Below are positions 6,442 to 33,738 of a DNA stretch of 64,000 nucleotides, piece after piece (the first letter of the stretch is position 1; each line of letters begins with the position of its first letter). Made by a program: the position numbers and the translations under genes. The stretch spans positions 62,001-126,000 of the IMG/VR virus record IMGVR_UViG_3300033977_000108; one strand, 5' to 3'. The notes below the pieces were generated by a model that searched no databases, was not told where the DNA came from, and worked only from the letters and a program-made list of their open reading frames with translations.

Positions 6442-6450
6442 GATATTGCT

Positions 6451-14505: not shown

Positions 14506-14537
14506 GGCCGCGGCGCTTGGTCGCGGCCTTCTTTCTT
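14506..14537 (+). terminator. Intrinsic terminator after the tube gene
   Basis: GGCCGCGGC-gcttg-GTCGCGGCC followed by TTCTTTCTT. Confidence 0.7.
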
Positions 14538-17373: not shown

Positions 17374-17814
17374 ATGACCGAGAGTCTGACCCCCACAGAG
17401 GAACAGAAAACCAAAGAAACGCTACTTACCCCTGCCGAATTCCTGGCTACCGTTCCAGGCGCGCCGACGCCACAGCAACTGGATGGTTGGAAAGCCAATG
17501 TGCCAAATCACAGGCTCAAGCTATTCGCCCCTGAAAAGGGTCGGGTATTCATTATCCGTGGTATTACCGGCTTGGAAATGACTGCCATACGGCGAGCCGT
17601 TCCTGATAATGCCCGAGATCCAGATGATGAAGTCCAGTGCGCTGCTGTTGAAAAGGCTGTGCTATGGACTAATACTACTGCCAGCAATAGGATTACCAGG
17701 GCTGAGTTGGTATCTGGTTCGGCTGGTTTGCCGTTCGCTATCTTCACTGTGATAGCAGAACTGAGCGATTATTACGCGCCCGACTTTATCGCCAGTGTAT
17801 CTGGAGATCTATAG
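17374..17814 (+). CDS. Putative tail assembly chaperone
   Basis: QLDGWK..FIIRGIT..E; between tube genes and the giant genes. Confidence 0.55.
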   Translation: MTESLTPTEEQKTKETLLTPAEFLATVPGAPTPQQLDGWKANVPNHRLKLFAPEKGRVFIIRGITGLEMTAIRRAVPDNARDPDDEVQCAAVEKAVLWTNTTASNRITRAELVSGSAGLPFAIFTVIAELSDYYAPDFIASVSGDL

Positions 17815-18341: not shown

Positions 18342-21300
18342 ATGTCATTGCCTTATGACCAATCATTCTTTGTTCTTGACATTGAGACGGGCGGCGAGCT
18401 TCTCGAACGCGGCGGGGAAAGTGTAGCCGGGTTTTTTGAGGCAAGTGAACGAGGCCGCTTTGTTGGCAGTGCCTACCATACTCTTCACTCCAATCATCCA
18501 CTCTTACAAGTAGACGTCTATAGAGGCGGAGCATTTGCTCCTATTGGCGGCCCAGGCGGCGGTTATGTGCGCCCGCCTGTGGGCGCTATTGCCAGCACTT
18601 TCTCCCTGAAAAAAGGCACTTGGGAGCGCGCGATGGCTTCTTCCATGACGGAGGAGGAGGCCGCCCATAGAGTATTTGAAGAGCTGGCAGCCCACATAGG
18701 GCAACATAAGCCTGCTATAGTCAGTGGCTATCACCCACTATACGATTTATCCTTTATTGAGACTCTTACCTGGCGCTATCCGAGCTTGTCTGCTTATAGG
18801 GGCAAACTTGCCGAATGGCGTCGGTTAGGACAGCTGAAAATTCAGGAGCTTGAGGAACCTTTCCTACGCCTGGCCCTGGCTTTTGGACAGCAGCATAAGG
18901 AATTCGCAGAGAAGTTCTTCCGTATGGGGCCGAACACCCCAATCACCCCAGCCTACTGGCCTGGCAAGCTGGCAGAGACCTTTGAGGAGATGAAGTTCGT
19001 TCCTGGATGGGGCCAGGAAAATATAGTAAGAGCATTGGGTGGTCAGAGGTTTTTAAAGTCATTACAACTGCTCTATCCATATGTCAATCTTACCGGTTTG
19101 CATGAAGCCCGTACTGACATCATCGCTTCTATTCACTCTTACGAGTTATTCCAGAGGGCATTACAAAAAGTAGAGGCTGGAGTAGATATTGAGACAGCCC
19201 TACAAGGTGCCCTACCAGACATAGGCCTTACGGCTGAAAGCTTCTTTAGATCGGTTTATCGTCCTTTTGAAACGGCGGCGGGCGCTATAACAACAAAATC
19301 AGTCGCCCGAGCCGGCTCCCGCATAAAAGGCAAATACTGGGCCATAGCAGCTGGCGCTACTCTATTATCTGCTCTATTGGCCAGCTCACGGGTCGGCAAG
19401 CCTGCTCATCACATAACCGGCTTACAAGATATAGGCCTGGCTCCTGAAGGCAGACACGCGCGCACCGACTTTGGATCCGGTTATCAGGGGCTGGATAAAA
19501 GTCCTACCCTTACCACTGCAGAATATATGCTGGCAGCCGGGGTATTATATGGGACTCATCGCTATCTCCTGCGCGCGGTGCCAGAATATGGTAAGACCCT
19601 ATTCAGTTTCTTCCGGACATTAGAAGAACGCTCGCCAGCGGGTATATTGAAGACTTTTAGTCTAGGGGATATATTTTCTGCTTATATACCCAGTACGCTC
19701 CATTATGAGCCAGGACAGCTAATCTCCAAGGGCACTGGTCTTTATACAGAACTGGGCGCCCATTTCCAAAGACTGACAGGCCTCGGTAAGGAACAAATGC
19801 GTGCTGGCTTGACCTTTGAAAGGGTCAGCACGGCCGAGCCATACATGCGATTGAAGGAAGCGCCTGGTGTTTCAGTAAGATTTGCCAGGCAAGGGCGATT
19901 GGTTACTTCTTCCGCTCGCTATGGCGCCCCCTTACGCCCAGCGCCTCCTATGCCAAAGACCTATATGTCTTTGGATCAGATGTTCAATCTAAAAGCTTGG
20001 AGTCGCGCATTTGAGGCCTTAAAGGAAACACAGCGCGGGCGGCGCCTACAAGGGATTGCTTGGAGCACTTTTGAAGGCGAGAAGATAGGATTTCAGCCTT
20101 TGTATGTCCGCCGCGGCCCTGGGGCGGCAAAACAGGTTGCCAGCCGCTTAGATACTTTACGACGCGTATTATTTGAACTGGCAGAACGCCCACAGCGATT
20201 AATGACTGAGGCGGGAGTAGGCCTAAAGGCAGGCTCCTATAACAAAGTCTTCAACTTTCCGTTTGTAGGGAAAGGCGGGCTGATAAATCAGCTCCTTCTA
20301 AAGCGAGTTTTACCAGCTTATCTTGCTTATACCGGCCTGCGTTGGCTGGATTACAAGACGGGCCATAGAGCGAGCGATGCCATAGCTGGCCTGCCTTTGC
20401 ATGCTAATATCTTGCGGGCAGAGCTCACAGACTTTATACCTGGCCTGCGCAAGGTAACGGATTTCTATGCCAGGAATGTGCCTGGGCCCCAATATGGGCC
20501 TTTGGCCTTACCTGCAGGCGGTGCTTTTCTTGGTGCGGCCTTGCACTATGCTCATGTTTTACAGGGTCGATTCCAAACAGAGGCCGTTAGAAAAGCCGCG
20601 CTTTCAAAATATGGCAAAGTGGGAGCCTTGATTGGCGCCGCCCTTATGCTGCCATTGCTGCCGGGTATGATAGGCAGCCGAAAGACAGCGGATGAACTGC
20701 GCCGTATCTATTCCGGCGAAGAGGAAATACCGGTCAGGGCCGGGCGCTGGTGGGAGGTGGGCTCCACCCCATTCTGGGGCGGACGCATCAAGTATTTTAG
20801 ACCGCATTGGTATGCCAGAATGAAGGCGCGCTCCGAAGCGGTTTCATTGTGGGGCTCCGAGGAAGAGTATTGGAGACATCACCCTCTACTGCACCCTATA
20901 CGGGCATTCACACATCCTTATGAACTGGAAGAGAGGAACTATTGGCAACGGCCTTATCCGGTAACCTCGCCTGCCTTTTCTAATGTTCCATTGATTGGGC
21001 CTATTCTCGCCGCGACAATAGGCAAAATAGTAAAGCCGCCACGCTACATGCATCAGGGCGAATGGTCCCCGGAAGAATACACCCTTTATAGTCCGAGGCT
21101 GGAGCCGAAGGAGGGCGGCCTGCCTCCAGCGCGCGCTAGAGATGAGTATGGCCTGATGGATGTACTCAAGCGCGAGGCGTATAATGTCACCGAATTCATA
21201 GGATTGCCTGGGTTTATAGCCCAAAGCTTATGGCAACGTATTCATCCGCCGCAGCCCGGCGGGCCTCCTATGCTACAGGGTAGCAGGCAAATGACCAACA

Positions 21301-23264
21301 TTTCCAGGCGCTATTATGAGAAAGAGTTAGGCGCTTTGATAGGAATAACGCCTAGCGCTGATATATATGGATTTTCAGAGCCTCTTCGTCGCTTCATTCA
21401 GCCCGAACGGCTCGGCGCCCAAGTCAATGAAATACCAAATCAGATGCCTTCTTGGCTGCCTGGCGAGGATTACTATACCAACTTCCGCGTAGGTGATATT
21501 TATGCCCGCATACCAGAAGGTTATATGCGATTGCCGGGGGCTGGCTATGAGGCGCTACACCCGGAATTGCAAGGTCTAAAGCCCGAGGAATATCCTGATT
21601 TGACAAAGCTCAGAATTCTGGCTGATGTCGCACCTTATTCAAGGCAATATGAATCAATGCGTGTCCGAATGCAGGCTGAAGCCCGGCGCGATACAAACTT
21701 GGCTATTGAAGTTGATAGAGTAACGCAACAAGTAGAACGATTGAAGAAATCTACTATTCAACTTAGTCATCGTCGCTTTACCGAAGAGGTGCAGAAGATA
21801 CGCGGTACTATAAAAGCCGCTGGTCCGACAGGCGTGCTACTGGAAGAATATCCTGGCCGCACTTTCCAATTTAGCGCCCTCGGTATGTCAATGTCGGACA
21901 TGTCAGCCGTTGTATTGGGAGAACAGAATGCCCTGACTCGGACGCAAATGGTACAGGAGGTAGAGCGCAGACAACAGCGGAGAGATGAGTTTATTGCGAA
22001 CTATTTACAGCCCGGGACCCAAGTATTCGCGACTGTGCCGGTAGGCGCCGTAGAACATGCCCCCGAAATACAAGCGGTACTTGAAACACGCGATATAAAC
22101 ATCAACAGGGCCCTCATCAACCAAGGATTAGCCAGATTGCGACCAGAGGAGGCCGGAGCTGAATATCAGGCCATGGAAGGACCTGCTGGAAGGGTATTAG
22201 GCACTCTGGCCGAATCTTTAGCCTTTGCCGGCGATCAGAGTATGTTCAATCCGATGCGCTACATACCGACGCCATTCGGCACCAAACTTTGGCAGATGCA
22301 AACGCCCCTCGCACGCTATCAAGAAGAAGAGATTTACGGCAATCGTATGCGCAGATGGGACAGACCTTTACATGATTTCTTGATGCCTTATCTGCGTGGT
22401 ATGACCCATAGACTGACCGGTCAGAATTTGATGCCGGCCGAGGTACAACACAAGAGAAACTTGAATGAGTTGGCTGATGTTATGAAATACTTGCGCGGCA
22501 TACAATCCGGCAGTGCCATGCAAGCAGCCCGCACAGCAATGGGAGCTAATTTGTTTGCCGAGCCTTCATATGTAATGTCCACTTTACCACGACGTGAACA
22601 GCTTTATTTCGCCGACTTTCTGAATGAAACGAACCCTGATAAGCGCAGAGAGATTCTTGATTCTGTGGCGCCGGAGACCGCCCGTGCCTTGCAGGCTCAA
22701 TGGGTAACCAGAGATGCCAGTATACTTCGTGCAGAAGGGAAGCGAGTCCCACCTATAGGCGAAGGCGGCCGGCTATACACACCAGAGGATGTTGAAGATT
22801 ATGAGCGCGCCCAGACTGATTTGACCTATGGTCAGTATGTCCGAAGCAGGGAGATAGCCGAGTTCTTTGCTCGCACTGGCTGGGCTATGCCAGAAGCGGG
22901 GGCCGATGCCTACAATCCTGCCATTGACTACGAAGATTTGAAAGTCAAGATGCTAATGCAGGAAGGCTATAATCTGCACGATTTCAATCTTTATGACGAC
23001 CGCGCCAATACCGTCTGGCGTAAGCCCTATCTGGATGGAGCTATACGGGAGCTCACCAGTGGCGGAAATCGGTCGGTAGAGAACATCAGGCGCACGGTAG
23101 AAAGACTTATGCTGGACTCACAAGGCGGCAATCCGAAAGTGATTGCTACGGGGCATCCGTCTAATCAACCGATAAATCGTGTAAATGTTACCTTTGATGA
23201 ACATCCGGAGAACGACATGCTCCGTGACATACAGCGTAATAGAGAAGAGTATGCGGTAGGCTAA
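18342..23264 (+). CDS. 1640-aa virion/tape-measure-locus protein with N-terminal DEDDh exonuclease domain, TM segments and a degenerate SNase-like domain
   Basis: VLDIETGG / GYHPLYDL / LHEARTD; hydrophobic YWAIAAGATLLSALL and GALIGAALMLPLL; NINRALINQGLA. Confidence 0.6.
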   Translation: MSLPYDQSFFVLDIETGGELLERGGESVAGFFEASERGRFVGSAYHTLHSNHPLLQVDVYRGGAFAPIGGPGGGYVRPPVGAIASTFSLKKGTWERAMASSMTEEEAAHRVFEELAAHIGQHKPAIVSGYHPLYDLSFIETLTWRYPSLSAYRGKLAEWRRLGQLKIQELEEPFLRLALAFGQQHKEFAEKFFRMGPNTPITPAYWPGKLAETFEEMKFVPGWGQENIVRALGGQRFLKSLQLLYPYVNLTGLHEARTDIIASIHSYELFQRALQKVEAGVDIETALQGALPDIGLTAESFFRSVYRPFETAAGAITTKSVARAGSRIKGKYWAIAAGATLLSALLASSRVGKPAHHITGLQDIGLAPEGRHARTDFGSGYQGLDKSPTLTTAEYMLAAGVLYGTHRYLLRAVPEYGKTLFSFFRTLEERSPAGILKTFSLGDIFSAYIPSTLHYEPGQLISKGTGLYTELGAHFQRLTGLGKEQMRAGLTFERVSTAEPYMRLKEAPGVSVRFARQGRLVTSSARYGAPLRPAPPMPKTYMSLDQMFNLKAWSRAFEALKETQRGRRLQGIAWSTFEGEKIGFQPLYVRRGPGAAKQVASRLDTLRRVLFELAERPQRLMTEAGVGLKAGSYNKVFNFPFVGKGGLINQLLLKRVLPAYLAYTGLRWLDYKTGHRASDAIAGLPLHANILRAELTDFIPGLRKVTDFYARNVPGPQYGPLALPAGGAFLGAALHYAHVLQGRFQTEAVRKAALSKYGKVGALIGAALMLPLLPGMIGSRKTADELRRIYSGEEEIPVRAGRWWEVGSTPFWGGRIKYFRPHWYARMKARSEAVSLWGSEEEYWRHHPLLHPIRAFTHPYELEERNYWQRPYPVTSPAFSNVPLIGPILAATIGKIVKPPRYMHQGEWSPEEYTLYSPRLEPKEGGLPPARARDEYGLMDVLKREAYNVTEFIGLPGFIAQSLWQRIHPPQPGGPPMLQGSRQMTNISRRYYEKELGALIGITPSADIYGFSEPLRRFIQPERLGAQVNEIPNQMPSWLPGEDYYTNFRVGDIYARIPEGYMRLPGAGYEALHPELQGLKPEEYPDLTKLRILADVAPYSRQYESMRVRMQAEARRDTNLAIEVDRVTQQVERLKKSTIQLSHRRFTEEVQKIRGTIKAAGPTGVLLEEYPGRTFQFSALGMSMSDMSAVVLGEQNALTRTQMVQEVERRQQRRDEFIANYLQPGTQVFATVPVGAVEHAPEIQAVLETRDININRALINQGLARLRPEEAGAEYQAMEGPAGRVLGTLAESLAFAGDQSMFNPMRYIPTPFGTKLWQMQTPLARYQEEEIYGNRMRRWDRPLHDFLMPYLRGMTHRLTGQNLMPAEVQHKRNLNELADVMKYLRGIQSGSAMQAARTAMGANLFAEPSYVMSTLPRREQLYFADFLNETNPDKRREILDSVAPETARALQAQWVTRDASILRAEGKRVPPIGEGGRLYTPEDVEDYERAQTDLTYGQYVRSREIAEFFARTGWAMPEAGADAYNPAIDYEDLKVKMLMQEGYNLHDFNLYDDRANTVWRKPYLDGAIRELTSGGNRSVENIRRTVERLMLDSQGGNPKVIATGHPSNQPINRVNVTFDEHPENDMLRDIQRNREEYAVG

Positions 23265-26200
23265 TGGCGTTGAATCCTTTTCTAAAGTTCGCCAGTAATC
23301 CGGTTCTCACCGGGCTGACCGGCTTGGCAGCCGTGACAGCGCCGTTTGCTATGCGAACGGAGAATCGCGGCTATTTTAAGACGGCAGCCATTACTACTCC
23401 TTTGATACTGGCAGCAGGCATTGCTGCACCATCCTTTATTTCCTCGGCGGCATCCGCCATTTCAGAACATGTACGCTTTACTGGTAGGGCTTTTAGCAAA
23501 TTGGCCCAAGCCGGTTCTATGGATTATAAGACACTCCGGCAATTCTTGGAAACGGGCAACATAGGGAGTTCTGCTTATGACGCGGCCAGCGAATTTCTAC
23601 CGGCTGCCGCAATAGATTGGCTTGGCCAGTTTGGCCGGCCAGCCGCCAAAACGCTTACGCAAAGATTGACAGACATTACCACTTTGTTGAATAATATGGC
23701 TACCAATGAGTTATGGGAGGAGAACAAATGGCTGCTCACTCATGCCTTTGAGCGCAGCCGCCTAAGGACAACTCCTCCAGCGGCTTTGGCAGGTGCCGAT
23801 TTGACCATAGCTGGTACTCCTTTGGGCAGGGAAGAGCTTTTCCAACGCCTGCGCCAAGCCGAACTAAATAAGAATGAATACTTCTTGGAGGTGCTGGAAG
23901 GTCAGCTGCGCTATGGAGGCATGCTACGGGACCTCGGACCAATGACTGATATAGCAGCACAAGCGATACAAGCCATGCCGCCGGAAACATTTGGAGTAAA
24001 AGACCTGATTGGCGGTGTATCGCCTTTAGATTTGTTGAGAAGTCAGAAAAGAGAGAAGGTTTATGAAGCCCTAATGGCGAGGCAAAATCTATTGGACACC
24101 GCTACCTTTGTGGCAACCGATGTAGCGACAACGCCAAAACTTATCCGCATCAATCTTCGCCTTCCAGGAGGGGATTTAGCAATACCTATTTTGGATCCGA
24201 CTACAGGAGTTGTCCATGTCGGTGCTGATTATCGTATTGCTTCTGGTCGGGGTGTCTGGGAGCCGGTCGGGGATACAAAGACCGTGCGTATGGCTTTGGA
24301 TGAGTGGATAGCCTCTCATTTGGACCGGCCATTTGCGGATTTACAAAGTGCCTTGGATATAGCTCCTGTCGGCAGTATAGATAAACTGAATGCCTACAAA
24401 TATGAGAGCATGGCTGCTGATAGGGCCGCTGTTCTTACCCCGGGCGCTACGAAGCGTTATAGCATGGAATACATACCGGCCCCAGGTAAAGTATTCCCAG
24501 GAAATAGAACATACGAAGATTTGACGCAGGCCGAGAGGATGACTTATGCCCGCAGTGCCTTGGCCGATTGGGCATCTCCAATAACCGCAGAACATCCCTT
24601 CCTTGGTGGCACTTTTGGCGCCAGGGAGTTGGAGTTCTATACGGCTGGCCGCATGGCCCCGTGGAGTAGGCAATCGGAAGCCATGCGAGCATTCAACAAG
24701 CCCTTGCATTATGGTTATGTGCCGCTGGAACTTCGGCCCAGATTTACGACTGCTGCTATGGCAGGCGAAGCCTCGGTTAGACATACATTTGCTATGATAA
24801 GCCCACAGGAGGCCGAGTTGTTTGGCGGCTTACCCCTATCAACCGGCGGGCTGGCCGGCGGAAAAGGCGCGGCCATTGGAAGATTGAGATTTGAACACCC
24901 CAATCTAACAGAGGCACAAGCCTCGCAACTGTGGGATACCTTGGTTAGAGAGCAATTGAGTAATCCTGATGTATTACAGGCTGCCCGTTTGGCAGGAGGT
25001 CTGGGTGAAACAGAAGCCATCCTGAGACCTGGCCAGGCCACCCGGATACCAACTATCAAGAACCGCTGGATACCATTGAATACAGTCAACATACCTTTCA
25101 ATACGCCCTATGGACCCAATCAAGTAATAGGCTGGGGCGATATAGAGCGTGTTGTCTCCGAAGCCGATGAAACCCGCCTATTGAAATTGGAACGGAGCAT
25201 TTCAGGACAATTACAGGCTTTGGTAGAAGAGACTTACTTCTCCAGGACTGGGGATAAGCTGAATGTCGGTGGGGTAAAAGCCACCACTATTCAGCCTACT
25301 GCGGAGGATTTTGAGGCGTTGCGACAGGTTGTAAATCTGAAGCGCAGGATGCTTGGAGAAACTGAAATCCCAGAGGATGCCACCGCTCTAATCAATGAGA
25401 TGTTCTTCCATGAGAAAATACATGAGCCTGCTGGTCTATTAGCCGAGCAGGCTGCCAGCTTATACGAGGAAGCCAAGGCTTTGCAGACGGAGTTTCCTTT
25501 TGATCCCGCCCTCACCGAAGCTATGACAGCCTTTAGAGAGGGCATGGCGGCACAGAAAATCTCCTACACCGGCGCCGGATTTGAAGAAGATACAGCGGCA
25601 CTGGCTGGTTGGCTGCGGGAGGATTTGAATACACGACAGGCACGGATACTTGACCTCGCCGAAGGTTTAGCCAAGAACCTGGAAATCTACGCCGGCGCGC
25701 ATCGTGGAAGAATAATGAAGCATGGCGGCGTCCTAAAGGGTTTCCTGAATGCCAAGAATGAACAAAGCCTTCTGCGTTATACATTATTCCATCATTTGGA
25801 GGCCGGCACTGCCAAATGGAACGCCCAAGGCTTATATATGCCGAAGCGTACTGGGGTGACTTGGGAATTCTATAGCCGTCTCTACGAAAGTGGCTTGATT
25901 GAGTCAATGCGTACTGTTTTTGGCAGGGTCAATTTCTTACATGGCGAGATACGGCCGATGGCTGATTTGGCCCGCTATTTCGGCGCGGGAGATTATACGA
26001 AAGTCTTTGGCGAGCGAGTATTCAGCATGGCCGAAGCTGTGCCTTCCGGGTTCTCCATGAAGGGGCTTACTGGGCGAGTAGGCTTGTTTGATTATACTGA
26101 CCCAAGGTTTAGGAATCCCTTCTCTATTCGTCTTGACCGCCCGATTGATGTAGAGATGGGCAGGCAAATGGTAAAACATGAATACATCCCTGTATTGGGC

Positions 26201-28072
26201 TGGGGTACTTATGGCGGCGGCCCGAATATAGAAGGCCCAGGACAATTCTATGCCACCGCTTACGAGAAAGCCCTCAATAGACTTATCGCCGCTTCCAAGG
26301 GAACTGGGGTGGGCTATGGGGAAGCTTGGCGAGCTTATCAGGACGCCATCGCCAAAGCGGCATTTGGGAAAGAGGGAGCTGTTTGGAGGGCTACGACATT
26401 TGATCCGATGGCTATAAGTGCGACATCAGAGCAGATAGCCAAACTTGAAGGCAGGAGTCCATTTGAGATTTTTGTATCGGAAGAAATAGCCGAAGGCTTT
26501 GGACCAGAGGTGCGTGCTGCTATGAGGAAGGAGGGTGTTTATGGCATCATAACTCGGCACCCGGAACAGGCGACATTGCCTATTTTGGTCAGAGTTCCAG
26601 CTAGGAATTCAGCCGAGATAGCGCTCCTGGGGAAGCGTGGCATTGGCATTTCTAAACAATTGGCAGGTGCTTTGGAGGCGGATTTTGATGCTGACACTTT
26701 GAACTTATTTTTGATGTCGCCGCGCGATAGACCAGCGATTGCCGAATTGAGGGCGGCTATAGAAGAACCGACAAGCTTTGCTAATCAATATCTCAACACC
26801 ATCAATCTTATGTATGCCAATGCCGAAGCGTCGGCTACCCATAGGATGAGTACAATACGCGGCGAGGGCTCTCCTTGGGAATACTTGCTTGGTAAGGTAG
26901 GTAAAGAGGCCGGCAATGTGGAAACAGCCGCCTCTCGATTGAGCGGTCGATTCATAGGACATTTTGCGAATCTGGTGTATGCGTCCCAGACTATGTTGAG
27001 AAGCCATCCAGCTTTTATGATTGACCCCAAAGAGCGGGCATTTTTGAGCAATGTGTTGTGGCTCCCGAAACAGGCAGCCATCGGCGCAGTGAAAAGCACA
27101 CAAGCCGTTGGGACACAAACCGCGGTAGAGACTATCTTTGAACGGATGCGCGCCGGCCTGGGTATGGGGACCAAAGTAGGTGCCGAGCAATATATTTCTG
27201 GCTTGCAGGAGATTGCCAAAGGCTGGAAGTGGGAGGCAGCCCTAACACCTGAAACAGCAGCCCAATTGTTTGGCGTATCCGAACAAGAGCTGGCCGAAAG
27301 CATCGGTATGGGAACGGTTGGCAATTTACGGCAAGCCATGCGCGATCAGAGACACTTCAATATTGTGCAGCAGGTAGTGGGGTCTGAACGCGTCCGGCGG
27401 GATTTGGAAACCTTGATTCAACATCCTTATGGGCAACAAGCAAGGAATGTCACCCATTTGTTGATGACACCTTCTGAAAGAATAACCACAGAGGCCTTTC
27501 AGGAGTTTCGCCGTATTGGCAATGTGGCTCCTGAATTACAGGCATTGGCTGGCGAGCAGCGTGGAATACGCGATGTCGTGGCTGGTATTCTTGGCGCTTG
27601 GAATCGGGAAACCGCTGCTGCCCGAGGCGCTGTTGGCAAAGCCTTCAAAAGTACTCTACCTATACTGGGCTTGGGACTTGGCGCCGCTGCTTTGGCCGGC
27701 GTATTTGTCGGTGGCGGAATGGGAGAAAAAAGTGCCTCTGCTTATCGGCCAGAAATGGCTTTGGGAACGACCGATAATGTCCCAGGTGAGCCTATTGCTG
27801 GCCTTATGGCGCCTGTCCGACCGCCCAGAAGGATTATACCCGGGCCGCCAATGACAAGGACAGCAGTAATTGCACCTATGCGTCAGTCTGTGGATTTAGA
27901 GGTCAGATCTCCTTCTGGGGACCGAGAACGAGCAGCTGAGCTTAGCCGAGTGGTTTCACAGGTAGCTGGTGGAGGCATCACGTTCTCAAATATCAACTAT
28001 GTGAATGGTCATAAGCGATTGAGCACGCTGCGCATGAGACAAAAGGTACATGAAATGTTAGGTGAAGAATAA
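23264..28072 (+). CDS. 1602-aa putative single-chain double-psi beta-barrel RNA polymerase (virion-associated)
   Basis: GDKLNVGGVK (25250), ITRHP (R at 26555), LEADFDADTL (DFDAD 26681-26695); hydrophobic termini. Confidence 0.6.
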   Translation: MALNPFLKFASNPVLTGLTGLAAVTAPFAMRTENRGYFKTAAITTPLILAAGIAAPSFISSAASAISEHVRFTGRAFSKLAQAGSMDYKTLRQFLETGNIGSSAYDAASEFLPAAAIDWLGQFGRPAAKTLTQRLTDITTLLNNMATNELWEENKWLLTHAFERSRLRTTPPAALAGADLTIAGTPLGREELFQRLRQAELNKNEYFLEVLEGQLRYGGMLRDLGPMTDIAAQAIQAMPPETFGVKDLIGGVSPLDLLRSQKREKVYEALMARQNLLDTATFVATDVATTPKLIRINLRLPGGDLAIPILDPTTGVVHVGADYRIASGRGVWEPVGDTKTVRMALDEWIASHLDRPFADLQSALDIAPVGSIDKLNAYKYESMAADRAAVLTPGATKRYSMEYIPAPGKVFPGNRTYEDLTQAERMTYARSALADWASPITAEHPFLGGTFGARELEFYTAGRMAPWSRQSEAMRAFNKPLHYGYVPLELRPRFTTAAMAGEASVRHTFAMISPQEAELFGGLPLSTGGLAGGKGAAIGRLRFEHPNLTEAQASQLWDTLVREQLSNPDVLQAARLAGGLGETEAILRPGQATRIPTIKNRWIPLNTVNIPFNTPYGPNQVIGWGDIERVVSEADETRLLKLERSISGQLQALVEETYFSRTGDKLNVGGVKATTIQPTAEDFEALRQVVNLKRRMLGETEIPEDATALINEMFFHEKIHEPAGLLAEQAASLYEEAKALQTEFPFDPALTEAMTAFREGMAAQKISYTGAGFEEDTAALAGWLREDLNTRQARILDLAEGLAKNLEIYAGAHRGRIMKHGGVLKGFLNAKNEQSLLRYTLFHHLEAGTAKWNAQGLYMPKRTGVTWEFYSRLYESGLIESMRTVFGRVNFLHGEIRPMADLARYFGAGDYTKVFGERVFSMAEAVPSGFSMKGLTGRVGLFDYTDPRFRNPFSIRLDRPIDVEMGRQMVKHEYIPVLGWGTYGGGPNIEGPGQFYATAYEKALNRLIAASKGTGVGYGEAWRAYQDAIAKAAFGKEGAVWRATTFDPMAISATSEQIAKLEGRSPFEIFVSEEIAEGFGPEVRAAMRKEGVYGIITRHPEQATLPILVRVPARNSAEIALLGKRGIGISKQLAGALEADFDADTLNLFLMSPRDRPAIAELRAAIEEPTSFANQYLNTINLMYANAEASATHRMSTIRGEGSPWEYLLGKVGKEAGNVETAASRLSGRFIGHFANLVYASQTMLRSHPAFMIDPKERAFLSNVLWLPKQAAIGAVKSTQAVGTQTAVETIFERMRAGLGMGTKVGAEQYISGLQEIAKGWKWEAALTPETAAQLFGVSEQELAESIGMGTVGNLRQAMRDQRHFNIVQQVVGSERVRRDLETLIQHPYGQQARNVTHLLMTPSERITTEAFQEFRRIGNVAPELQALAGEQRGIRDVVAGILGAWNRETAAARGAVGKAFKSTLPILGLGLGAAALAGVFVGGGMGEKSASAYRPEMALGTTDNVPGEPIAGLMAPVRPPRRIIPGPPMTRTAVIAPMRQSVDLEVRSPSGDRERAAELSRVVSQVAGGGITFSNINYVNGHKRLSTLRMRQKVHEMLGEE

Positions 28073-31000
28073 TGAGTTTGATGGCAACAGAGGAACGGAC
28101 AGCAGGAACCTCGGGGTACTTCCGCATTGGTGACGTGGTTTTGGATATTCCTCCGGAAGAGATAATCACGAGCAAGATAACCAATAACGAAGAAATGACC
28201 CCTATTCGTGCGCCTTATCCTTTCTTGGAGAAAACCGGGCACGCCAGATGGGATGTGACCATCCATTGGAAAGCCCTCGTGGATAATACAGGAGGTGCTT
28301 CCGATTACTCTCAATGGATAAAGGTGCGGCGCATTCTGGCGATGTTGAAGGCCGCTCCTTTTGTTGAAGTGGAGAATAGGCACCTACGGCATCTATTTAT
28401 AAAAGACGATACGATAAACGCCCTATATTCAAGGATGGCTTTTGCCTTGAAGCAGCTGCGCGTGGATGTAAATCCAGACTTGGTTGATTGCTTGGATTGT
28501 ACCCTGACCATGTGCCTGTTCAACTATCGGCCATTTAGTAAAGACTTTGCCTACTTGGGAAAAGACGGGCGGCAGGTCAGCGCACACGAGTCGCCGTTCT
28601 TCGCGAAATACCTTGATGATTGGATTTCCAATAACTTGGACGCGCCTTATGCCGGCGAAGATATAGACTTTACATCAGCTTGGGATATACAAAAAGATGG
28701 CACGCTATGGTTCAAATGGCGGGAGATTATAGCTTTGCCCTTGACCCCCGTTTTAGGAAAGGACATGGGCGTTGTTCCATCCTTGGGCACTTGGAAACGC
28801 CCGCCTAATAGCCAGCAAGATACCGAGGCGGATTTGGCCAATCGCAGATACTGGCCGTGGACGCTGGATAAAAATAATGAAAGCCAGGTAACAGCCCTGC
28901 GTAATGCTATCATAAAATACGAATCCGTATCTGCGGCTTATCCCCATGGAGGCAACCCCAACGCTATATCCCCGACAGGCGCCACCGGTTTGATGCAATG
29001 GACCTCGACCAGTGCTATACAGACATTGAGCACGTTGGGAGGTCATTATTTTCAGGCTGCCATACAGAGCGGATTGTTGCAGCGTATGGGCAACGGCAGC
29101 CTGCAATGGGCCGGGCCAGACCACATGCAGAGCTATCATACTTGGATGACCGGCACCCAAGCACAGACCGGGCTAACGAGTGAGCAGCAACTGGACATGC
29201 AAAATCAGATGGCTGATACATGGATGACCATGAAGCTGCAGGAATCCAATTATGATGTTGACCAGACCTTGATGCATCATCTTGGTGTGTATGAGTACTA
29301 TTCAAGTCTCAATACTGTAAAAATACATGGTAGGGACAACTATTATGCTTCCAAGCCTCATGCAGAAGAGGCAAGTGTATGGTGGGACAATGTAGTCGGC
29401 GACTTCCGTACAGCCATCAACGACCCGACGGCCTTGCAGGGCTCATCGCCGCCCCAAAATGTGAACACAGCGGCGCAGGCATCTGTTCAACCAGTGCCAG
29501 CTACTCCTACTCCGAATCCGCCCAATCAGCCAGCTACGTCAACCCAGAATGTAACCAGTGAATCAGCGCCAACTGCGGCAGAAATGAAAGCTATAAATGA
29601 TAAAATCACTGAAGGCTGGATGCCAGACCATTATACCGATCTCTGGGCTTTTTTATACTGGGTCCACTCCATGAAGCTGGTGGATGAAGAGCATGGTGAT
29701 AGCGGGCCTCTATTAGAAATGTCTCCGGTTGATTGCGGCCTGTGGCCGACTAATCTGTCAGTTGTATTCTCCAATAACCTGGCCCAGCTGCCGCTACAAG
29801 ACGAGGTGTATCCTACTTATCAGCACATGGGGCCGGCTACAACCTTGGTCAGCGTTAGTTTTACTTCAGTCGGCAAGTCAAAGTATGAAGAAGAGGAGCC
29901 CTATCACGTAGGTCTGTCTTGGCTGACTGCTACCTTCTCTACATTGGACAATCAATATCACAACTATCACTCTTTGTGGCGGATGGCCTCCACTAACCAC
30001 AAGATACAAGGCATTGTCTTGCAGAATAAAGTCTTGAATATGTTAGGGATACGAGGGATATTACTAGACAGTTTCACCACCCAGACCGTAAAGGAAAGCC
30101 CGAATGTTGTCCAGGCCGAGTTTTCAGCCTATCAGTTTGAGAACGTTTATGAGGACCAGGTAGCTTATAGGGTAGCGGGAATAGGCACGCTGGAGGCAGC
30201 TCTGTGGTGGGATATGCTGGCAGGTACGGCTAATGGGCAGCCTACACCTAATCATAAGCTATTCAATGATTTTAGGGCGGGGCTGACGCCGGAACAGGCT
30301 GCTCCTTATGTAACGCTATTCGGATTACAAGATACTCTGAATAATCCGACATCTGCCGCTGCGCAGAGTAATTTGCAGTCTTATCTCACCGAGAATCGCG
30401 GCTATCTTGATGACCCGGGCTGCCGAGTAATACCAATGCCTGCTGATGTAGAAAACAATCCCCTATGGACGCAGCATATGAATGTTACTGATCCGGGGAC
30501 TGTATTGCAGCAGTTTCCAAACCTACAGAACGAATATCCAGCCATCCCGGCGGCGATGGAAGCCCATGTCGGATTGACCTATACCGATTGGTTCGTATTG
30601 TCAAGAAGCATAGGCGTCCCGACCACCCAGGCTAAACCTTATCTTTCCTGGCTAATCGGAGAAACTCCGAATCTGGCCGGAGTGCCTCCTACTTCATCGT
30701 ATACCAATTATTTGGCTGTGGCGGGCCAGATAGACACCTTGATTGCCAATCAGGCGACGAGCCAAGGTATAGTACAACCAATTACCCAGCTCTGTCAGTT
30801 TTATTTCAACTTCAAACGCAAAACGGATAACTCCCTTTTATCAGCAATGCTGACCATTGAAAGAATGAATAATCCGCTTGGGCAAATATTCAAAAATTCT
30901 ATCAATTCAGGCGGACCAGGGCGTGACCCTTGCAATGCAGAGCACGGAGCATATAGAGATATTGGACTGATGCCCGTATCTAATGCTGGTATAGATAATA

Positions 31001-33738
31001 ACCCTGCCTATTACTTCTATGATTACAGCAATGAAATGAAGGCCAGCCTGGGTGATAAGGTAACATCAGCGGTGACTTCTGCCTTACAGGCAGAAGACAT
31101 GATAAATCAAGTCGCGGGCTATCCGCCTACGCTGGATGTGAAATCTATTTCAATCGCCGACCAGAACAAATCAAAGACGCAACGGATACAGGTAGCTACA
31201 TCAGAATCAGCTCCTCTCTTGGGCTCCATGAGCCGGGCATTCCCAGCTTTCAAGTTATTCTTTGTGGAAGAGAACCTTGATAAACCATTCTACATGTTGG
31301 ACAACTTCTATAGCTATGCCAATGTCCTGGATATGGAGATTATCAAATACCGAGACCAGCCGGATACAGCTGTGCTGACCATTACTAATAAGTCGCATCT
31401 GTTATCACACCGGCTCTTTGATAACACTGTCGCTGGTAGGCAAGAAAGAAAAGATAACATACAGCTCGTAAATCTACCGAATGCCGGTCCTGGGATGGCA
31501 TCGCCAGGCTACCAAGGCGGAGCGGTTATCAATAAAACGCCGAATGGCTTTCTTGAGATGAAGAATCTTACTGATTCTTTGCCTGGCAGCACTGCTGATA
31601 ATGTTCAACGAGCCTCGCCTAACTGGTTCGCTTTGCAGACCGGCTCAAAGATACAGGTAAGACTGGGTTTCACCAATAATCCTGATGACCTATTGCCTGT
31701 CTTCAGTGGCTTCGTCACCGACATACAAGGAGATGAGGTATTGACCATTACGGCGCAAGGATTTATGCTTGAGCTTATGTCTCCGGCGCCGGATTTGATG
31801 AAGCGTGTCGGCAATGTGGCTAACTATATCGCTTGGAATGCGGATGCCATTGGGGTTATGGATACCTGCCTGCAATCGCCCTATGCCAAGCATTTTGGGC
31901 ATTGGCAGATAGGTAATACCCCCAATCAATTTATAAAAGGATTCCAATGGGGCCCAGTTATCTATTCAACTTTCAATGCTTTGACGACCGGCCGGGTCAG
32001 AGATGTCAGCGTCTTGCTGAAACAATCCTATAATAGGCGAAACGAGAATCTGCGTATCAATAGATTCGTCAGCTTTGATGGTAGCAGTACACCACAAACA
32101 GCCAGGCCTTGGAACTATGAAGGTACGGCATGGGGTGCTTTCCCGCCCTGTTATTGGATACCAGATGACACATCTGTTACTCCATGGCAGATAATGCAGG
32201 ACATAGCTAGGCGTTATCCTGAATACATCCTGGCTGTCAAGGATTATGGTTTCCCTTATGATGTGGCTGCTACTCTCGTGTACCTTGACCCTAACGAGTG
32301 GTATTTTTCAAGGTATCAACTGCCGGGGGATTTGGAAAAGATACGCGGAGCAAACATTAGCACTGATAAGTTTGATAGGTGGTGGGCAAGTCAAGGCCGG
32401 TCTCAAGTTGAAGGTCTCCTAGGACTTGGTAAATCCAGCACTCCACAAGCTACTACTGTCCTTGTCGGGGCTGTGGCTGCTGTAATGTTTGGAAATGTGA
32501 ATGGGGGCTGGGTTCAGAACCTATTATCCAATACGTTAGCTCGGAACGCTTTGGTGGCAGGCTCGGTTGCTACCACACCCGGAATGGCTGCTCTGCGTTA
32601 TGGGCTCTCGGTTACGCCGCTCAAAAGTCCCCTGTGGTCAACGCCGGCACAGTTGATTGTAGATTGGATAACCCAAGGCCATGGTCCCGCCTTTGATCAA
32701 TTTGTGAATGCCAGCGAGATAGTCTGTTCCTCAGCTATCATACCATTGATAACTTTGCCCCTGCCCGGGATGAATTTAGCCCATGATTTTATGTCTACGG
32801 TGACCGGCATACAAACAGATCTCTATGCTTATTTGCACAGTACGTACGGTGACCTAAAGACAACACTGGGCGATTGGATGAAACCAGTGCGAAACTGGTG
32901 GTTTGCTGATAGGTCGGTTATCCTGGAGAATGCTATAACAAAGAATGATGATGTATTCAACGCCGTACAGATAAATGGAACCACCACGGCTATAAATGAC
33001 ACTATACCTGAACAATACCGCCACATCCTGGTAGCCGATAAGATGTGCGTAAATCCTAAAAAGAATATAGGGTATCAAGACCCAAATCTCAAGTTTGCCT
33101 ATCAGGCGTCTTTCCTGAAAGAGGAAATAGGCAAGATGTATAGGGGTGAATTAGTTCTGCTGGGTTCGCCGGAGATTAGCCCGTATGACATCATTATAAT
33201 CTCTGATGAGTGGATGGGAATGCGGGGACCCGTGGAAGTGGACTCCGTTATCCATTCCTTTTCACAAGAAACCGGCTACATTACCATTGTGAAGCCGCGC
33301 GCGCTAGTCTCGGTCAATGAGCGAGTAACGGCGCCTGTGTACATTGTCTTGAGCGATTTGTGGAGGAGCATTGCAAAGGATGTCGGACTTGGCGCCAGGT
33401 TCTCAAGCATCAAGGCAGCAGCGAGTATACAGAATGATACCATCACTACTGGGGCAGTGGCATTAGCGGCTGGCGCCACATTGGCAACCGTAGGAATAAG
33501 TGAGTTAGCCACAGTGGGCTGGTTATTTGGCGTCAATGTGACGAATCTGAACCCTATTATAATCTGCCCGATAGAACGCTTTGGCAGACCTTGGGTCGCC
33601 GGGCTTCAGGGTTTCAAGATTTCCAGCCTATTAGGCGTAGTAAAAGACCGCTATTATAGATTCTGTCAGTCAGAGTTTTATCCTTTCATTGAGTCCTGGC
33701 GGGACGCTGAAAGGCAGTATTTGACCATAACTAACTGA
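28072..33738 (+). CDS. Baseplate hub protein with lytic transglycosylase domain
   Basis: IIKYES..NPNAISPTGATGLMQ (SLT); GSKIQVRLGF..VFSGFVTDI; YRGELVLLGSPEISPYD..VDSVIHSFS..GYIT (hub). Confidence 0.75.
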   Translation: MSLMATEERTAGTSGYFRIGDVVLDIPPEEIITSKITNNEEMTPIRAPYPFLEKTGHARWDVTIHWKALVDNTGGASDYSQWIKVRRILAMLKAAPFVEVENRHLRHLFIKDDTINALYSRMAFALKQLRVDVNPDLVDCLDCTLTMCLFNYRPFSKDFAYLGKDGRQVSAHESPFFAKYLDDWISNNLDAPYAGEDIDFTSAWDIQKDGTLWFKWREIIALPLTPVLGKDMGVVPSLGTWKRPPNSQQDTEADLANRRYWPWTLDKNNESQVTALRNAIIKYESVSAAYPHGGNPNAISPTGATGLMQWTSTSAIQTLSTLGGHYFQAAIQSGLLQRMGNGSLQWAGPDHMQSYHTWMTGTQAQTGLTSEQQLDMQNQMADTWMTMKLQESNYDVDQTLMHHLGVYEYYSSLNTVKIHGRDNYYASKPHAEEASVWWDNVVGDFRTAINDPTALQGSSPPQNVNTAAQASVQPVPATPTPNPPNQPATSTQNVTSESAPTAAEMKAINDKITEGWMPDHYTDLWAFLYWVHSMKLVDEEHGDSGPLLEMSPVDCGLWPTNLSVVFSNNLAQLPLQDEVYPTYQHMGPATTLVSVSFTSVGKSKYEEEEPYHVGLSWLTATFSTLDNQYHNYHSLWRMASTNHKIQGIVLQNKVLNMLGIRGILLDSFTTQTVKESPNVVQAEFSAYQFENVYEDQVAYRVAGIGTLEAALWWDMLAGTANGQPTPNHKLFNDFRAGLTPEQAAPYVTLFGLQDTLNNPTSAAAQSNLQSYLTENRGYLDDPGCRVIPMPADVENNPLWTQHMNVTDPGTVLQQFPNLQNEYPAIPAAMEAHVGLTYTDWFVLSRSIGVPTTQAKPYLSWLIGETPNLAGVPPTSSYTNYLAVAGQIDTLIANQATSQGIVQPITQLCQFYFNFKRKTDNSLLSAMLTIERMNNPLGQIFKNSINSGGPGRDPCNAEHGAYRDIGLMPVSNAGIDNNPAYYFYDYSNEMKASLGDKVTSAVTSALQAEDMINQVAGYPPTLDVKSISIADQNKSKTQRIQVATSESAPLLGSMSRAFPAFKLFFVEENLDKPFYMLDNFYSYANVLDMEIIKYRDQPDTAVLTITNKSHLLSHRLFDNTVAGRQERKDNIQLVNLPNAGPGMASPGYQGGAVINKTPNGFLEMKNLTDSLPGSTADNVQRASPNWFALQTGSKIQVRLGFTNNPDDLLPVFSGFVTDIQGDEVLTITAQGFMLELMSPAPDLMKRVGNVANYIAWNADAIGVMDTCLQSPYAKHFGHWQIGNTPNQFIKGFQWGPVIYSTFNALTTGRVRDVSVLLKQSYNRRNENLRINRFVSFDGSSTPQTARPWNYEGTAWGAFPPCYWIPDDTSVTPWQIMQDIARRYPEYILAVKDYGFPYDVAATLVYLDPNEWYFSRYQLPGDLEKIRGANISTDKFDRWWASQGRSQVEGLLGLGKSSTPQATTVLVGAVAAVMFGNVNGGWVQNLLSNTLARNALVAGSVATTPGMAALRYGLSVTPLKSPLWSTPAQLIVDWITQGHGPAFDQFVNASEIVCSSAIIPLITLPLPGMNLAHDFMSTVTGIQTDLYAYLHSTYGDLKTTLGDWMKPVRNWWFADRSVILENAITKNDDVFNAVQINGTTTAINDTIPEQYRHILVADKMCVNPKKNIGYQDPNLKFAYQASFLKEEIGKMYRGELVLLGSPEISPYDIIIISDEWMGMRGPVEVDSVIHSFSQETGYITIVKPRALVSVNERVTAPVYIVLSDLWRSIAKDVGLGARFSSIKAAASIQNDTITTGAVALAAGATLATVGISELATVGWLFGVNVTNLNPIIICPIERFGRPWVAGLQGFKISSLLGVVKDRYYRFCQSEFYPFIESWRDAERQYLTITN

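What the first reader, a model, noticed from the sequence alone, without database searches (positions are those of the whole stretch)
18342..23264. Tape-measure-position giant protein carrying an apparently intact DEDDh exonuclease
Seen: ExoI (DIE), ExoII (GYH..YD) and ExoIII (HEARTD) motifs in the first ~260 aa, then TM-like segments and an SNase-like end lacking DGDT. It directly follows the chaperones and is TAATG-coupled to the RNAP-like gene. Its Arg-rich composition contrasts with the outer virion proteins. Inference: an ejected, membrane-anchored protein delivering a nuclease (DNA-end processing, RNA trimming or anti-defence) together with the polymerase.
Basis: partly seen in the sequence, partly recalled or inferred. 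Interest (0 to 1): 0.68.

Follow-up and report, generated by a model that had tools for sequence, protein, structure and literature searches.

The report
Virion tail-lumen protein carrying an exonuclease
A 1640-residue internal tail protein of an uncultured peat jumbo phage has gained an N-terminal 3'-5' exonuclease domain with all catalytic residues conserved, so the phage probably carries a nuclease in its virion and may deliver it into the host, which has not been described for this kind of protein.

Summary
ORF 18342-23264 (+, 1640 aa) is real. It directly follows the two tail-chaperone genes and overlaps the next giant gene by TAATG.

- **Exonuclease domain (aa 1-~300).** It is a DnaQ/RNase T-type DEDDh exonuclease. 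D13, E15, D135, H254 and D259 are kept in 15 of 16 orthologs at 24-44% identity. A family profile hits RNase T in the PDB (E 1.9e-4). An AlphaFold model (pLDDT 88.8) aligns to ExoI, Pol III epsilon, RNase T and TREX1 at Z 11-13.6.
- **Rest of the protein.** It is orthologous to gp145 of Bacillus phage 0305phi8-36, a virion protein found by mass spectrometry. It holds hydrophobic helices, a hyper-conserved Pro/aromatic-rich core, and an SNase-like fold at aa 1148-1283 (not at the end) that lacks the catalytic residues.
- **Domain distribution.** Cultured relatives and one Terracidiphilus relative lack the exonuclease module, so it is a clade-specific N-terminal addition.
- **Composition.** This protein (pI 9.2) and the next (pI 7.4) are the only non-acidic large proteins in a tail block otherwise at pI 4.0-5.2.

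Ejection, membrane anchoring and the substrate remain inference. The neighbour's RNAP-like label rests only on conserved motifs. The host is probably Acidobacteriaceae from peat.

The parts
17374..17814 (+). Tail chaperone 1 (146 aa), ortholog of 0305phi8-36 gp143 / ME3 gp033
   Evidence: Transitive BLASTP: the window protein matches L004/L008 orthologs at E 1e-37 to 1e-41, and those match gp143/gp033. The two-gene chaperonin is described in PMC2147016.
17827..18339 (+). Tail chaperone 2 (170 aa), ortholog of 0305phi8-36 gp144
   Evidence: Transitive BLASTP via L004_188 and L008_170 to gp144 (E 8e-7 and 2e-6). Its stop lies 2 nt before the ATG of the target ORF.
18342..23264 (+). Target ORF, 1640 aa (P0001): a gp145-family virion protein with an added N-terminal exonuclease
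   Evidence: tblastn and BLASTP to 0305phi8-36 gp145, ME3 gp035, Edson, WH1 and Moorella MTATph1 over aa ~590-1640. About 13 full-length orthologs in metagenomes.
18342..19271 (+). DEDDh (DnaQ/RNase T-like) 3'-5' exonuclease domain, aa 1-~310
   Evidence: AF2 model with pLDDT 88.8 and pTM 0.88. VIA-align Z 13.6 to ExoI, 12.9 to Pol III epsilon, 12.0 to RNase T, 11.7 to a TREX1 homolog (Plex9.1) and 11.6 to human TREX1. Foldseek hits in PDB, BFVD and Atlas are all DEDD exonucleases. Profile versus PDB gives RNase T at E 1.9e-4.
18378..18386 (+). ExoI motif, D13-x-E15
   Evidence: Invariant in all 16 aligned N-termini. Aligned to the DVET motif of RNase T.
18744..18746 (+). ExoII aspartate D135 (in GYHPLYD; family consensus GWNxxYD)
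   Evidence: Kept in all orthologs except P0011, where it is H. Aligned to HNxxFD of RNase T.
19101..19118 (+). ExoIII motif, H254-x4-D259 (the 'h' of DEDDh)
   Evidence: H and D are kept in all orthologs except P0011, where H is replaced by N. Aligned to HSALYD of RNase T.
19335..19391 (+). Hydrophobic, TM-like helix 1 (aa ~332-350), directly after the exonuclease domain
   Evidence: Kyte-Doolittle scan: weak in the window protein, 1.7-1.86 at the aligned position in relatives. Cultured relatives start about 30 aa before an N-terminal hydrophobic helix of their own (KD-positive in 0305phi8-36 and Moorella only); its equivalence to TM1 is not shown.
19413..19490 (+). Conserved motif ITGL..GLA..RH..TDFGSG (aa 358-383), function unknown
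   Evidence: F377, G378 and G383 are nearly invariant across 13 orthologs, and I358, G360, R371, H372, T375, D376, S379 and G380 are invariant in the 3-sequence alignment. The exonuclease-less Terracidiphilus homolog begins here.
20481..20678 (+). Helical hairpin with TM-like helix 2 (aa ~714-779)
   Evidence: Kyte-Doolittle 1.93 at aa 759-779. The AF2 helices match small membrane subunits only weakly, at Z 6-8. Homology to 0305phi8-36 gp145 starts here.
20679..21671 (+). Hyper-conserved Pro/Trp/Tyr-rich core (aa 780-1110)
   Evidence: The highest conservation in the protein: mean per-column identity to the window sequence is 0.46-0.67 per 40-aa block, mostly 0.6-0.67. It is 38% identical to gp145 over aa 763-909. 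AF2 confidence is low, pLDDT 24-57.
21291..21929 (+). Module (aa 984-1196) also found as stand-alone multi-copy 150-350 aa ORFs in Acidobacteriaceae chromosomes
   Evidence: Genome scan. 59% identity over 214 aa to L021:8016-8774. 89 hits across the loci.
21783..22190 (+). SNase-like OB-fold domain (aa 1148-1283) without the catalytic/Ca-binding residues
   Evidence: AF2 pLDDT is 64-89 per 10-aa block, mostly 77-89. The top 50 Foldseek hits are staphylococcal nuclease or Tudor-SN/SND1, with TMt ~0.6 for the nuclease rows. VIA Z 8.3-9.8 to SN-like parts of extended Tudor domains and to SNase. The alignment shows GPTG where SNase has DGDT. Pfam SNase is hit weakly by 3 of 12 members and is precomputed for P0011.
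22191..23264 (+). Mostly helical C-terminal region (aa 1284-1640), conserved to gp145
   Evidence: AF2 secondary structure. BLASTP to gp145 residues 1735-1925.
23264..28072 (+). Next gene (P0021, 1602 aa): a candidate two-barrel RNA-polymerase-like protein with hydrophobic N- and C-termini
   Evidence: TAATG overlaps at both ends. Motifs invariant in 6 orthologs: G663-D-K665...K672, and R1098-x-P1100...D1140-x-D1142-x-D1144. The nearest named Atlas clusters are RdRP PF05183 and Rpb1_2, at weak scores of 0.79 and 0.76. No profile or fold support.
28072..33738 (+). Baseplate hub with lytic domains (1888 aa), ortholog of 0305phi8-36 gp147
   Evidence: phrog_20474 at E 7e-46 and a weak SLT match. 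gp147 is a T4 gp27-like hub (PMC2147016).

Best explanation
The gene encodes the ortholog of 0305phi8-36 gp145. That is a conserved virion protein of this jumbo-myovirus lineage, always encoded in the order chaperone 1, chaperone 2, gp145-like, second giant protein, hub.

In a clade of uncultured peat/soil phages (host probably Acidobacteriaceae) this protein has gained a module of about 375 aa at its N-terminus. The module is a DEDDh 3'-5' exonuclease with a complete catalytic pentad, followed by an extra hydrophobic helix.

Shown here: the fold, the conserved catalytic residues, homology of the rest to a virion protein, the hydrophobic helices, a catalytically dead SNase-like OB fold, and a basic composition unlike the acidic outer tail proteins.

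Inferred:
- The protein is packed inside the tail with, or as part of, the tape-measure complex.
- It is expelled on sheath contraction, and its hydrophobic helices insert into the cytoplasmic membrane.
- The N-terminal nuclease is then placed at the cytoplasmic mouth of the DNA conduit. There it acts on 3' ends, either of the entering phage genome or of host nucleic acids, at the moment the neighbouring RNAP-like protein and the DNA arrive.
For: Fold and active site.

Homology of aa ~590-1640 to gp145 (annotated 'identified as virion protein by mass spectrometry') and to the 'virion structural protein' entries of ME3 and WH1.

The gene order is conserved in 0305phi8-36, ME3, Moorella MTATph1, Edson and six metagenomic contigs. 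Chaperone orthology.

The module is an addition. Cultured relatives begin about 30 aa before their first hydrophobic helix and score nothing against the exonuclease profile. A Terracidiphilus-MAG homolog starts at the position of aa 376.

The fusion is independently assembled in at least 13 contigs from different samples.

Hydrophobic helices. SN-like fold without catalytic residues.

The target protein has pI 9.2 and P0021 has pI 7.4. All other large proteins of the tail block have pI 4.0-5.2. This fits proteins shielded from the acidic outside and working with nucleic acid.

Tight TAATG coupling across the three giant genes.
Against: - There are no virion data for this phage. Virion location is carried over from a relative that shares under 30% identity overall and lacks the exonuclease.
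- A folded 300-aa domain is about as wide as a typical tail-tube lumen. It would have to sit in the neck or head, or travel unfolded.
- One ortholog lineage (P0011, and likewise the fragment P0020) has D135 replaced by H and H254 by N. Catalysis is therefore dispensable in at least one lineage.
- Pfam RNase_T does not reach any threshold, so the domain is very divergent.
- The hydrophobic segment after the domain is weak in the window protein itself.
- AF2 cannot fold most of aa 760-1100 and much of the C-terminal part, so the architecture of the body is unknown.
- The substrate and the side of the membrane are pure inference.
Confidence: 0.6

Rival explanations
1. The protein is itself the tape measure, or a co-tape-measure, and the exonuclease domain works mainly as a DNA-end holder. 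It would sit at the head-proximal end of the tail lumen and grip the 3' end of the packaged genome as a plug or pilot, with little or no hydrolysis.
For: The gene directly follows the G/GT-like chaperones, which is the usual tape-measure position. The neighbour looks like an enzyme rather than a ruler. gp145-like and gp146-like lengths both scale about 1.5-fold between ME3 and 0305phi8-36. Loss of two catalytic residues in P0011 with the domain retained fits a binding role.
Against: Five catalytic residues are kept in 15 of 16 orthologs while the rest of the domain is the least conserved part of the protein, which argues for catalysis. The AF2 model is not the long helical rod expected of a ruler. 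There are no Pfam or PHROG tape-measure hits. The published assignment gives the ruler role to gp146.
Confidence: 0.2
2. The nuclease is an injected counter-defence or host-takeover enzyme. It would degrade host nucleic-acid molecules, such as signalling oligonucleotides, defence RNAs or DNAs, or host mRNA or DNA 3' ends, rather than process phage DNA.
For: The closest structural relatives include oligoribonuclease/REXO2, RNase T, TREX1 and the CBASS-associated Cap18 exonuclease. The module is a recent, clade-specific accessory, as is typical of arms-race genes. It is lost or inactivated in some lineages.
Against: Nothing here points to a substrate. The same structural hits include the DNA enzymes ExoI and Pol III epsilon at equal or higher Z. 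Being tethered by a hydrophobic helix would limit its reach to substrates near the membrane.
Confidence: 0.15
3. The domain acts only inside the producing cell, for example in DNA maturation or repair near assembling tails, and is removed or irrelevant in the virion. The fusion would then be a gene-organisation accident.
For: No other RNase_T-family gene is detectable in the 204.6-kb genome, so the phage might use this one for replication or repair.
Against: The fusion has the same architecture in at least 13 independent contigs at 37-48% full-length identity. It lies in the middle of the late tail operon with overlapping stop/start codons. Replication exonucleases are normally encoded with the replication genes.
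Confidence: 0.05

Closest known systems
Bacillus phage 0305phi8-36 gp145 (ORF145, ABS83703.1) and its homologs: Acinetobacter phage ME3 gp035, Bacillus phages Edson and vB_BceM_WH1 gp096, Moorella phage MTATph1 CDS0026
   Same: Same gene position (chaperones, this gene, second giant gene, hub). Homology runs from the second hydrophobic helix through the Pro/aromatic core, coiled coil and SN-like domain to the C-terminus: 38% identity in the best block and 21-30% elsewhere. gp145 is a virion protein found by mass spectrometry.
   Different: None of them has the exonuclease domain. They begin about 30 aa before their first hydrophobic helix. No function has been published for any of them, as far as the held literature shows.
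DEDDh 3'-5' exonucleases: RNase T, E. coli exonuclease I, Pol III epsilon (DnaQ), oligoribonuclease/REXO2, TREX1/2
   Same: RNase H-like fold at Z 11-13.6 over 160-185 aligned residues. The ExoI, ExoII and ExoIII motifs are colinear, with H-x4-D as the fifth-residue type.
   Different: Sequence identity is 12-18%. There is no Pfam RNase_T hit at any threshold. About 100 extra residues form conserved insertions between the motifs. It is fused to a virion protein of more than 1300 aa instead of being free-standing or part of a polymerase.
Phage tape-measure and ejection proteins that carry enzymes (T5 Pb2 and mycobacteriophage TM4 tape measures with cell-wall hydrolase motifs; T7 gp16 transglycosylase; N4 and crAss-like virion RNA polymerases) - comparison from general knowledge
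   Same: A large internal virion protein with hydrophobic helices that takes an enzymatic domain into the cell at infection.
   Different: The known cargo enzymes are cell-wall hydrolases, RNA polymerases or modifying enzymes. Full-text searches found no exonuclease-bearing tape measure or ejection protein.
Staphylococcal nuclease / SN-like domains of Tudor-SN and extended Tudor proteins
   Same: OB-fold with C-terminal helices at aa 1148-1283: Foldseek TMt ~0.6 and VIA Z 8.3-9.8. The NINRxLIxxGLA motif resembles the SNase C-terminal strand-helix.
   Different: The DGDT and RLxGIDxPE positions are not conserved. Like the eTudor SN-like domains, it is most likely a binding module and not a nuclease.

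Membership tests
DEDDh (DnaQ-like) 3'-5' exonuclease superfamily | ExoI motif D-x-E | tested here: met
   D13 and E15 are invariant in 16 of 16 N-termini and align to DVET of RNase T.
DEDDh (DnaQ-like) 3'-5' exonuclease superfamily | ExoII aspartate in an (H/W)N-x-x-(F/Y)-D context | tested here: met
   D135 lies in GYHPLYD (family consensus GWNxxYD). It is kept in all orthologs but P0011 and aligns to HNSSFD/HNANFD of RNase T.
DEDDh (DnaQ-like) 3'-5' exonuclease superfamily | ExoIII motif H-x4-D (the h subtype) | tested here: met
   H254-EART-D259 is kept in all orthologs but P0011 and aligns to H-SALY-D of RNase T.
DEDDh (DnaQ-like) 3'-5' exonuclease superfamily | RNase H-like alpha/beta fold | tested here: met
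   Predicted model with pLDDT 88.8. Z 11-13.6 to ExoI, epsilon, RNase T and TREX1. BFVD and Atlas hits are all DnaQ/RNase_T. The model is a prediction, not a solved structure.
DEDDh (DnaQ-like) 3'-5' exonuclease superfamily | Match to the curated family model (Pfam PF00929 RNase_T) above its cut-off | tested here: not met
   No hit even at E <= 10 for aa 1-330, or in the whole genome. Membership rests on a custom profile versus the PDB (E 1.9e-4) and on the fold.
DEDDh (DnaQ-like) 3'-5' exonuclease superfamily | Metal-dependent 3'-5' exonuclease activity | not testable with these tools
   Needs a biochemical assay.
Phage tape measure protein | Gene directly downstream of the tail assembly chaperone pair | tested here: met
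   The same order is found in all relatives examined.
Phage tape measure protein | Predominantly extended alpha-helical protein whose length sets tail length | tested here: inconclusive
   The AF2 model shows mixed helices, globular domains and about 40% low-confidence sequence. No tail-length data could be found for relatives. The literature assigns the ruler role to the next gene.
Phage tape measure protein | Match to known tape-measure families (Pfam/PHROGs) | tested here: not met
   No Pfam or PHROG hit for the whole protein.
0305phi8-36 gp145-like virion protein family | Significant colinear sequence homology to gp145 | tested here: met
   BLASTP blocks at E 4e-29, 2e-21, 9e-17 and 1e-4 across aa 763-1633. 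tblastn E 4e-23.
0305phi8-36 gp145-like virion protein family | Presence in purified virions | not testable with these tools
   Known only for gp145 itself, from the record's annotation.
Staphylococcal nuclease (PF00565) | SNase OB fold | tested here: met
   There are also weak Pfam hits in 3 of 12 family members and a precomputed hit in P0011.
Staphylococcal nuclease (PF00565) | Ca-binding and catalytic residues (the DGDT and R...D-x-P-E positions) | tested here: not met
   The family alignment shows GPTG/xPxG and F-x-x-S-x-L-G at these positions, with no conserved Asp or Arg. The comparison with the SNase motif is from general knowledge of that enzyme.

The most novel reading that the evidence does not exclude
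The three TAATG-coupled giant genes encode one ejected machine. The exonuclease-bearing protein forms the membrane conduit and resects the 3' strand of the first genome end to enter. This would expose a single-stranded template on which the co-ejected two-barrel RNA polymerase-like neighbour starts early transcription. It would be an N4/crAss-style 'bring your own polymerase' strategy, but housed in the tail lumen of a contractile-tailed jumbo phage and helped by a dedicated nuclease.
Probability: 0.12. Interest if true: 0.88.

Novelty: new variant of a known kind. Interest (0 to 1): 0.62.

Why it matters
Proteins that phages carry in the virion and release into the cell decide the first seconds of infection. 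The known ones are cell-wall hydrolases, RNA polymerases, and anti-restriction or modifying enzymes.

A nuclease built into a tail-internal protein would be a new class of delivered activity. It could explain how some large phages prepare their genome ends, or blunt host nucleic-acid-based defences, before any phage gene is expressed.

It also gives a first functional handle on the gp145 family. That family is conserved in jumbo phages of Bacillus, Acinetobacter, Moorella and Acidobacteria and has had no assigned role since 2007. Together with the RNAP-like motifs in the neighbour, it questions which of the two giant proteins really is the tape measure in this lineage.

Tried and rejected
- Pfam and PHROG scans of the whole protein and of aa 1-330 and 1380-1640 gave nothing useful.
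- Two word-index protein searches of the N-terminal domain (as part of the whole protein, and alone) found only the query. The exhaustive representative search was needed to find orthologs.
- Single-sequence phmmer against the PDB was blank for aa 1-320, 330-1100 and 1100-1640. A profile of aa 441-1640 was also blank.
- RNase_T (PF00929) and RdRP (PF05183) scans of the whole phage genome had no match.
- Neighbour gene P0021: there was no match by tblastn to phages, phmmer or profile to the PDB, BLASTP to 0305phi8-36 gp146 or ME3 gp036, word search, or hhalign to the YonO-like gp99 of 0305phi8-36. Its RNAP-like status rests on motifs only.
- I considered that gp146 might be the YonO-like polymerase cited by Iyer et al. 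2021. It is not. That protein is ORF99, ABS83659.1.
- I tried to use tail lengths of relatives to decide which giant protein is the ruler. There is no paper on Moorella MTATph1, the ME3 announcement has no dimensions, and the 2007 Virology paper is not held.
- The genome's 'direct terminal repeat' is only 127 bp exact. It cannot be taken as the physical end, so no argument from end structure was made.
- Read laying and complex prediction were not used. The only run holding the sequence is the probable source peat DNA sample, and no binding claim is made.
Full report
**1. What is there**

The window is bases 62001-126000 of a 204,633-bp IMG/VR virus record, judged complete, with a 127-bp exact terminal direct repeat. 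The only sequencing run that holds the gene is a peat metagenome.

ORF 18342-23264 (+) encodes 1640 aa. Upstream lie a tail sheath, two tail-tube paralogs and two small genes. The two small genes are transitive orthologs of the split tail chaperonin gp143/gp144 of Bacillus phage 0305phi8-36 (PMC2147016).

The stop of chaperone 2 is 2 nt from the ATG of the target ORF. The target's stop overlaps the next start as TAATG. That next gene (1602 aa) overlaps the hub gene (1888 aa) in the same way.

**2. The exonuclease domain**

Curated libraries see nothing in this protein. Word-index searches find no relatives of the N-terminus. The exhaustive search of 1.84 billion representatives found 19 hits. 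About a dozen are 1630-1740-aa orthologs and none is a free-standing exonuclease. Two more orthologs came from IMG/VR.

- **Conservation.** In the 18-sequence alignment the DxE, (W/Y)(N/H)xxYD and HxAxxD motifs are kept in every complete N-terminus except P0011, which has H for D135 and N for H254. The domain is otherwise the least conserved part of the protein. Retention of exactly these five residues therefore points to selection for catalysis.
- **Profile evidence.** A profile of the alignment finds RNase T of P. aeruginosa (E 1.9e-4) and of E. coli (E ~3e-3) as the best PDB sequences. Three colinear segments fall on ExoI, ExoII and ExoIII.
- **Fold evidence.** AlphaFold2 with this alignment gives pLDDT 88.8 and pTM 0.88. 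The top Foldseek PDB hits are REXO2, RNase T, Pop2/CAF1 and PolC-exo. VIA-align gives Z 13.6 to exonuclease I, 12.9 to Pol III epsilon, 12.3 to a Cas-associated DnaQ domain, 12.0 to RNase T, 11.7 to a TREX1 homolog (Plex9.1) and 11.6 to human TREX1. In all, 343 chains score Z >= 8. BFVD and the ESM Atlas return only DnaQ/DEDDh/RNase_T entries. A language-model search had already pointed weakly to RNase_T clusters.

The fold is there.

**3. The rest of the protein**

From about aa 590 to the C-terminus the protein is homologous to several phage proteins:
- 0305phi8-36 gp145, annotated as found in virions by mass spectrometry;
- ME3 gp035;
- the corresponding proteins of Bacillus phages Edson and WH1;
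- the corresponding protein of Moorella phage MTATph1.

Hydrophobic helices lie at aa ~332-350 and 759-779. Residues 780-1110 are the most conserved part. They are rich in Pro, Trp and Tyr, and AlphaFold cannot fold them as a monomer. That would fit a segment that is extended or folds only in the assembly.

Residues 1148-1283 fold confidently into an SNase-like OB domain. All 50 top Foldseek hits are staphylococcal nuclease or Tudor-SN/SND1. VIA gives Z 8.3-9.8 to SN-like parts of extended Tudor domains. The positions of the SNase Ca-binding and catalytic residues are not conserved. This is best read as a binding module.

**4. The exonuclease is a clade-specific addition**

The cultured relatives start about 30 residues before their first hydrophobic helix and score nothing against the exonuclease profile. 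A homolog on a Terracidiphilus MAG contig, 45% identical in the body, starts at the position of aa 376.

A contig binned with an Ignavibacteriaceae MAG carries the full exonuclease-bearing form. The fusion has been assembled independently in at least 13 contigs, with the same flanking genes wherever context could be read.

**5. Composition**

This protein (R 8.6%, pI 9.2) and its neighbour (R 7.4%, pI 7.4) stand apart from every other large protein of the block, all at pI 4.0-5.2. Within the protein, the basic part is aa 311-1110. The exonuclease domain itself has pI 6.0.

This fits two internal proteins that are shielded from the acidic peat environment and that work with nucleic acid or membrane.

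**6. The neighbour**

Six orthologs of the 1602-aa neighbour share only 21-30% identity, yet two motifs are invariant:
- G-D-K...G-x-K at aa 663-672;
- R-x-P followed 40 residues later by D-x-D-x-D-x-x-N at aa 1098-1147.

These resemble the signatures of the beta-like and beta'-like double-psi beta-barrels of two-barrel RNA polymerases. The YonO-like gp99 of 0305phi8-36 shows the same R-x-P...D-x-D-G-D spacing.

The nearest named language-model clusters are viral RdRP (PF05183) and Rpb1 domain 2, at low scores. Profile, BLAST and hhalign tests were all negative. The label 'RNAP-like' is therefore a reasonable lead and not a result.

**7. Mechanism**

What is shown: a nuclease fold with an apparently intact active site, fused to a member of a virion protein family, in the tail-interior gene block, with hydrophobic helices and an internal-type composition.

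What is inferred: that the protein lies in the tail lumen or neck, is expelled on contraction, inserts into the membrane, and presents the nuclease to 3' ends at the entry site.

I rate the overall picture at 0.6. Between DNA-end processing, counter-defence and a mainly binding role I cannot decide. The structural neighbours include both DNA enzymes (ExoI, epsilon, TREX1) and RNA or oligonucleotide enzymes (RNase T, Orn) at similar Z.

Three points weigh against a simple story:
- the size of a folded domain relative to a tube lumen;
- the P0011 lineage with two catalytic residues lost;
- the absence of any virion data for this clade.

**8. Comparison and novelty**

The protein is a member of the gp145 family by sequence. 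Its N-terminal domain is a member of the DEDDh superfamily by motifs and predicted fold, though not by the curated Pfam model.

It works like the enzyme-carrying tape-measure and ejection proteins of other phages. Full-text searches found no exonuclease in such a protein. I class it as a new variant of a known kind.

**9. Host**

Relatives of the body of the protein are concentrated in Acidobacteriaceae MAGs from peat, bog and soil. One copy lies inside a 3.26-Mb contig. This points to Acidobacteriaceae as the host group.

Noticed in passing
window 23264-28072 (+); motifs at 25250-25279 and 26555-26704: The next giant gene keeps two motifs invariant across six orthologs at 21-30% identity: G-D-K...G-x-K, and R-x-P...D-x-D-x-D-x-x-N. 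These resemble the two double-psi beta-barrels of YonO/crAss-type RNA polymerases. The protein has hydrophobic N- and C-termini. No profile or fold confirmation was obtained.
   Followed up: partly
window 21291-21929 (aa 984-1196 of the target); loci L018-L089, e.g. L021:8016-8774: This module occurs as stand-alone 150-350-aa ORFs in many Acidobacteriaceae genomes. There are several copies per genome, at up to 59-74% identity to the phage protein and over 90% identity between MAGs. The copies sit among ordinary metabolic genes, often as perfect inverted repeats of about 3.5 kb placed 6-16 kb apart. This could be a mobile element that captured a phage gene piece, or a host decoy. It is unexplained.
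   Followed up: partly
window 11793-51448: All outer tail, baseplate and fibre proteins are strongly acidic (pI 4.0-5.2) and very poor in Lys and Arg. Only the two giant internal proteins and chaperone 2 are neutral to basic. This may be an adaptation of exposed virion surfaces to acidic peat.
   Followed up: partly
L011:6001-11229 (P0011) and fragment P0020: One ortholog lineage retains the exonuclease domain but has H at the ExoII Asp position and N at the ExoIII His position. Its locus also has a weak GIY-YIG ORF just upstream on the other strand.
   Followed up: no
L014:7746-11750; L017:7524-11547: A Terracidiphilus MAG contig carries a 1335-aa version without the exonuclease module. A copy inside a 3.26-Mb Acidobacteriaceae contig is split into several frames, which indicates either a decaying prophage or long-read frameshift errors.
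   Followed up: partly
window 13762-14475 and 14517-15533: The two tail-tube paralogs hit phrog_9206, labelled 'major head protein'. This label appears to come from the RefSeq product names of 0305phi8-36 gp140/gp141, whose own notes say tail tube. It is an annotation error that propagates.
   Followed up: no
window 25-7548: A collagen-repeat, BclA-like fibre protein is followed by a run of glycosyltransferase genes, one of them fused to TPR repeats. They lie inside the structural region, which suggests glycosylated virion fibres.
   Followed up: no
window 19413-19490 (aa 358-383): A strongly conserved motif, ITGL..GLA..RH..TDFGSG, lies between the first two hydrophobic segments. The exonuclease-less homolog begins exactly here. 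No known family matches it.
   Followed up: no
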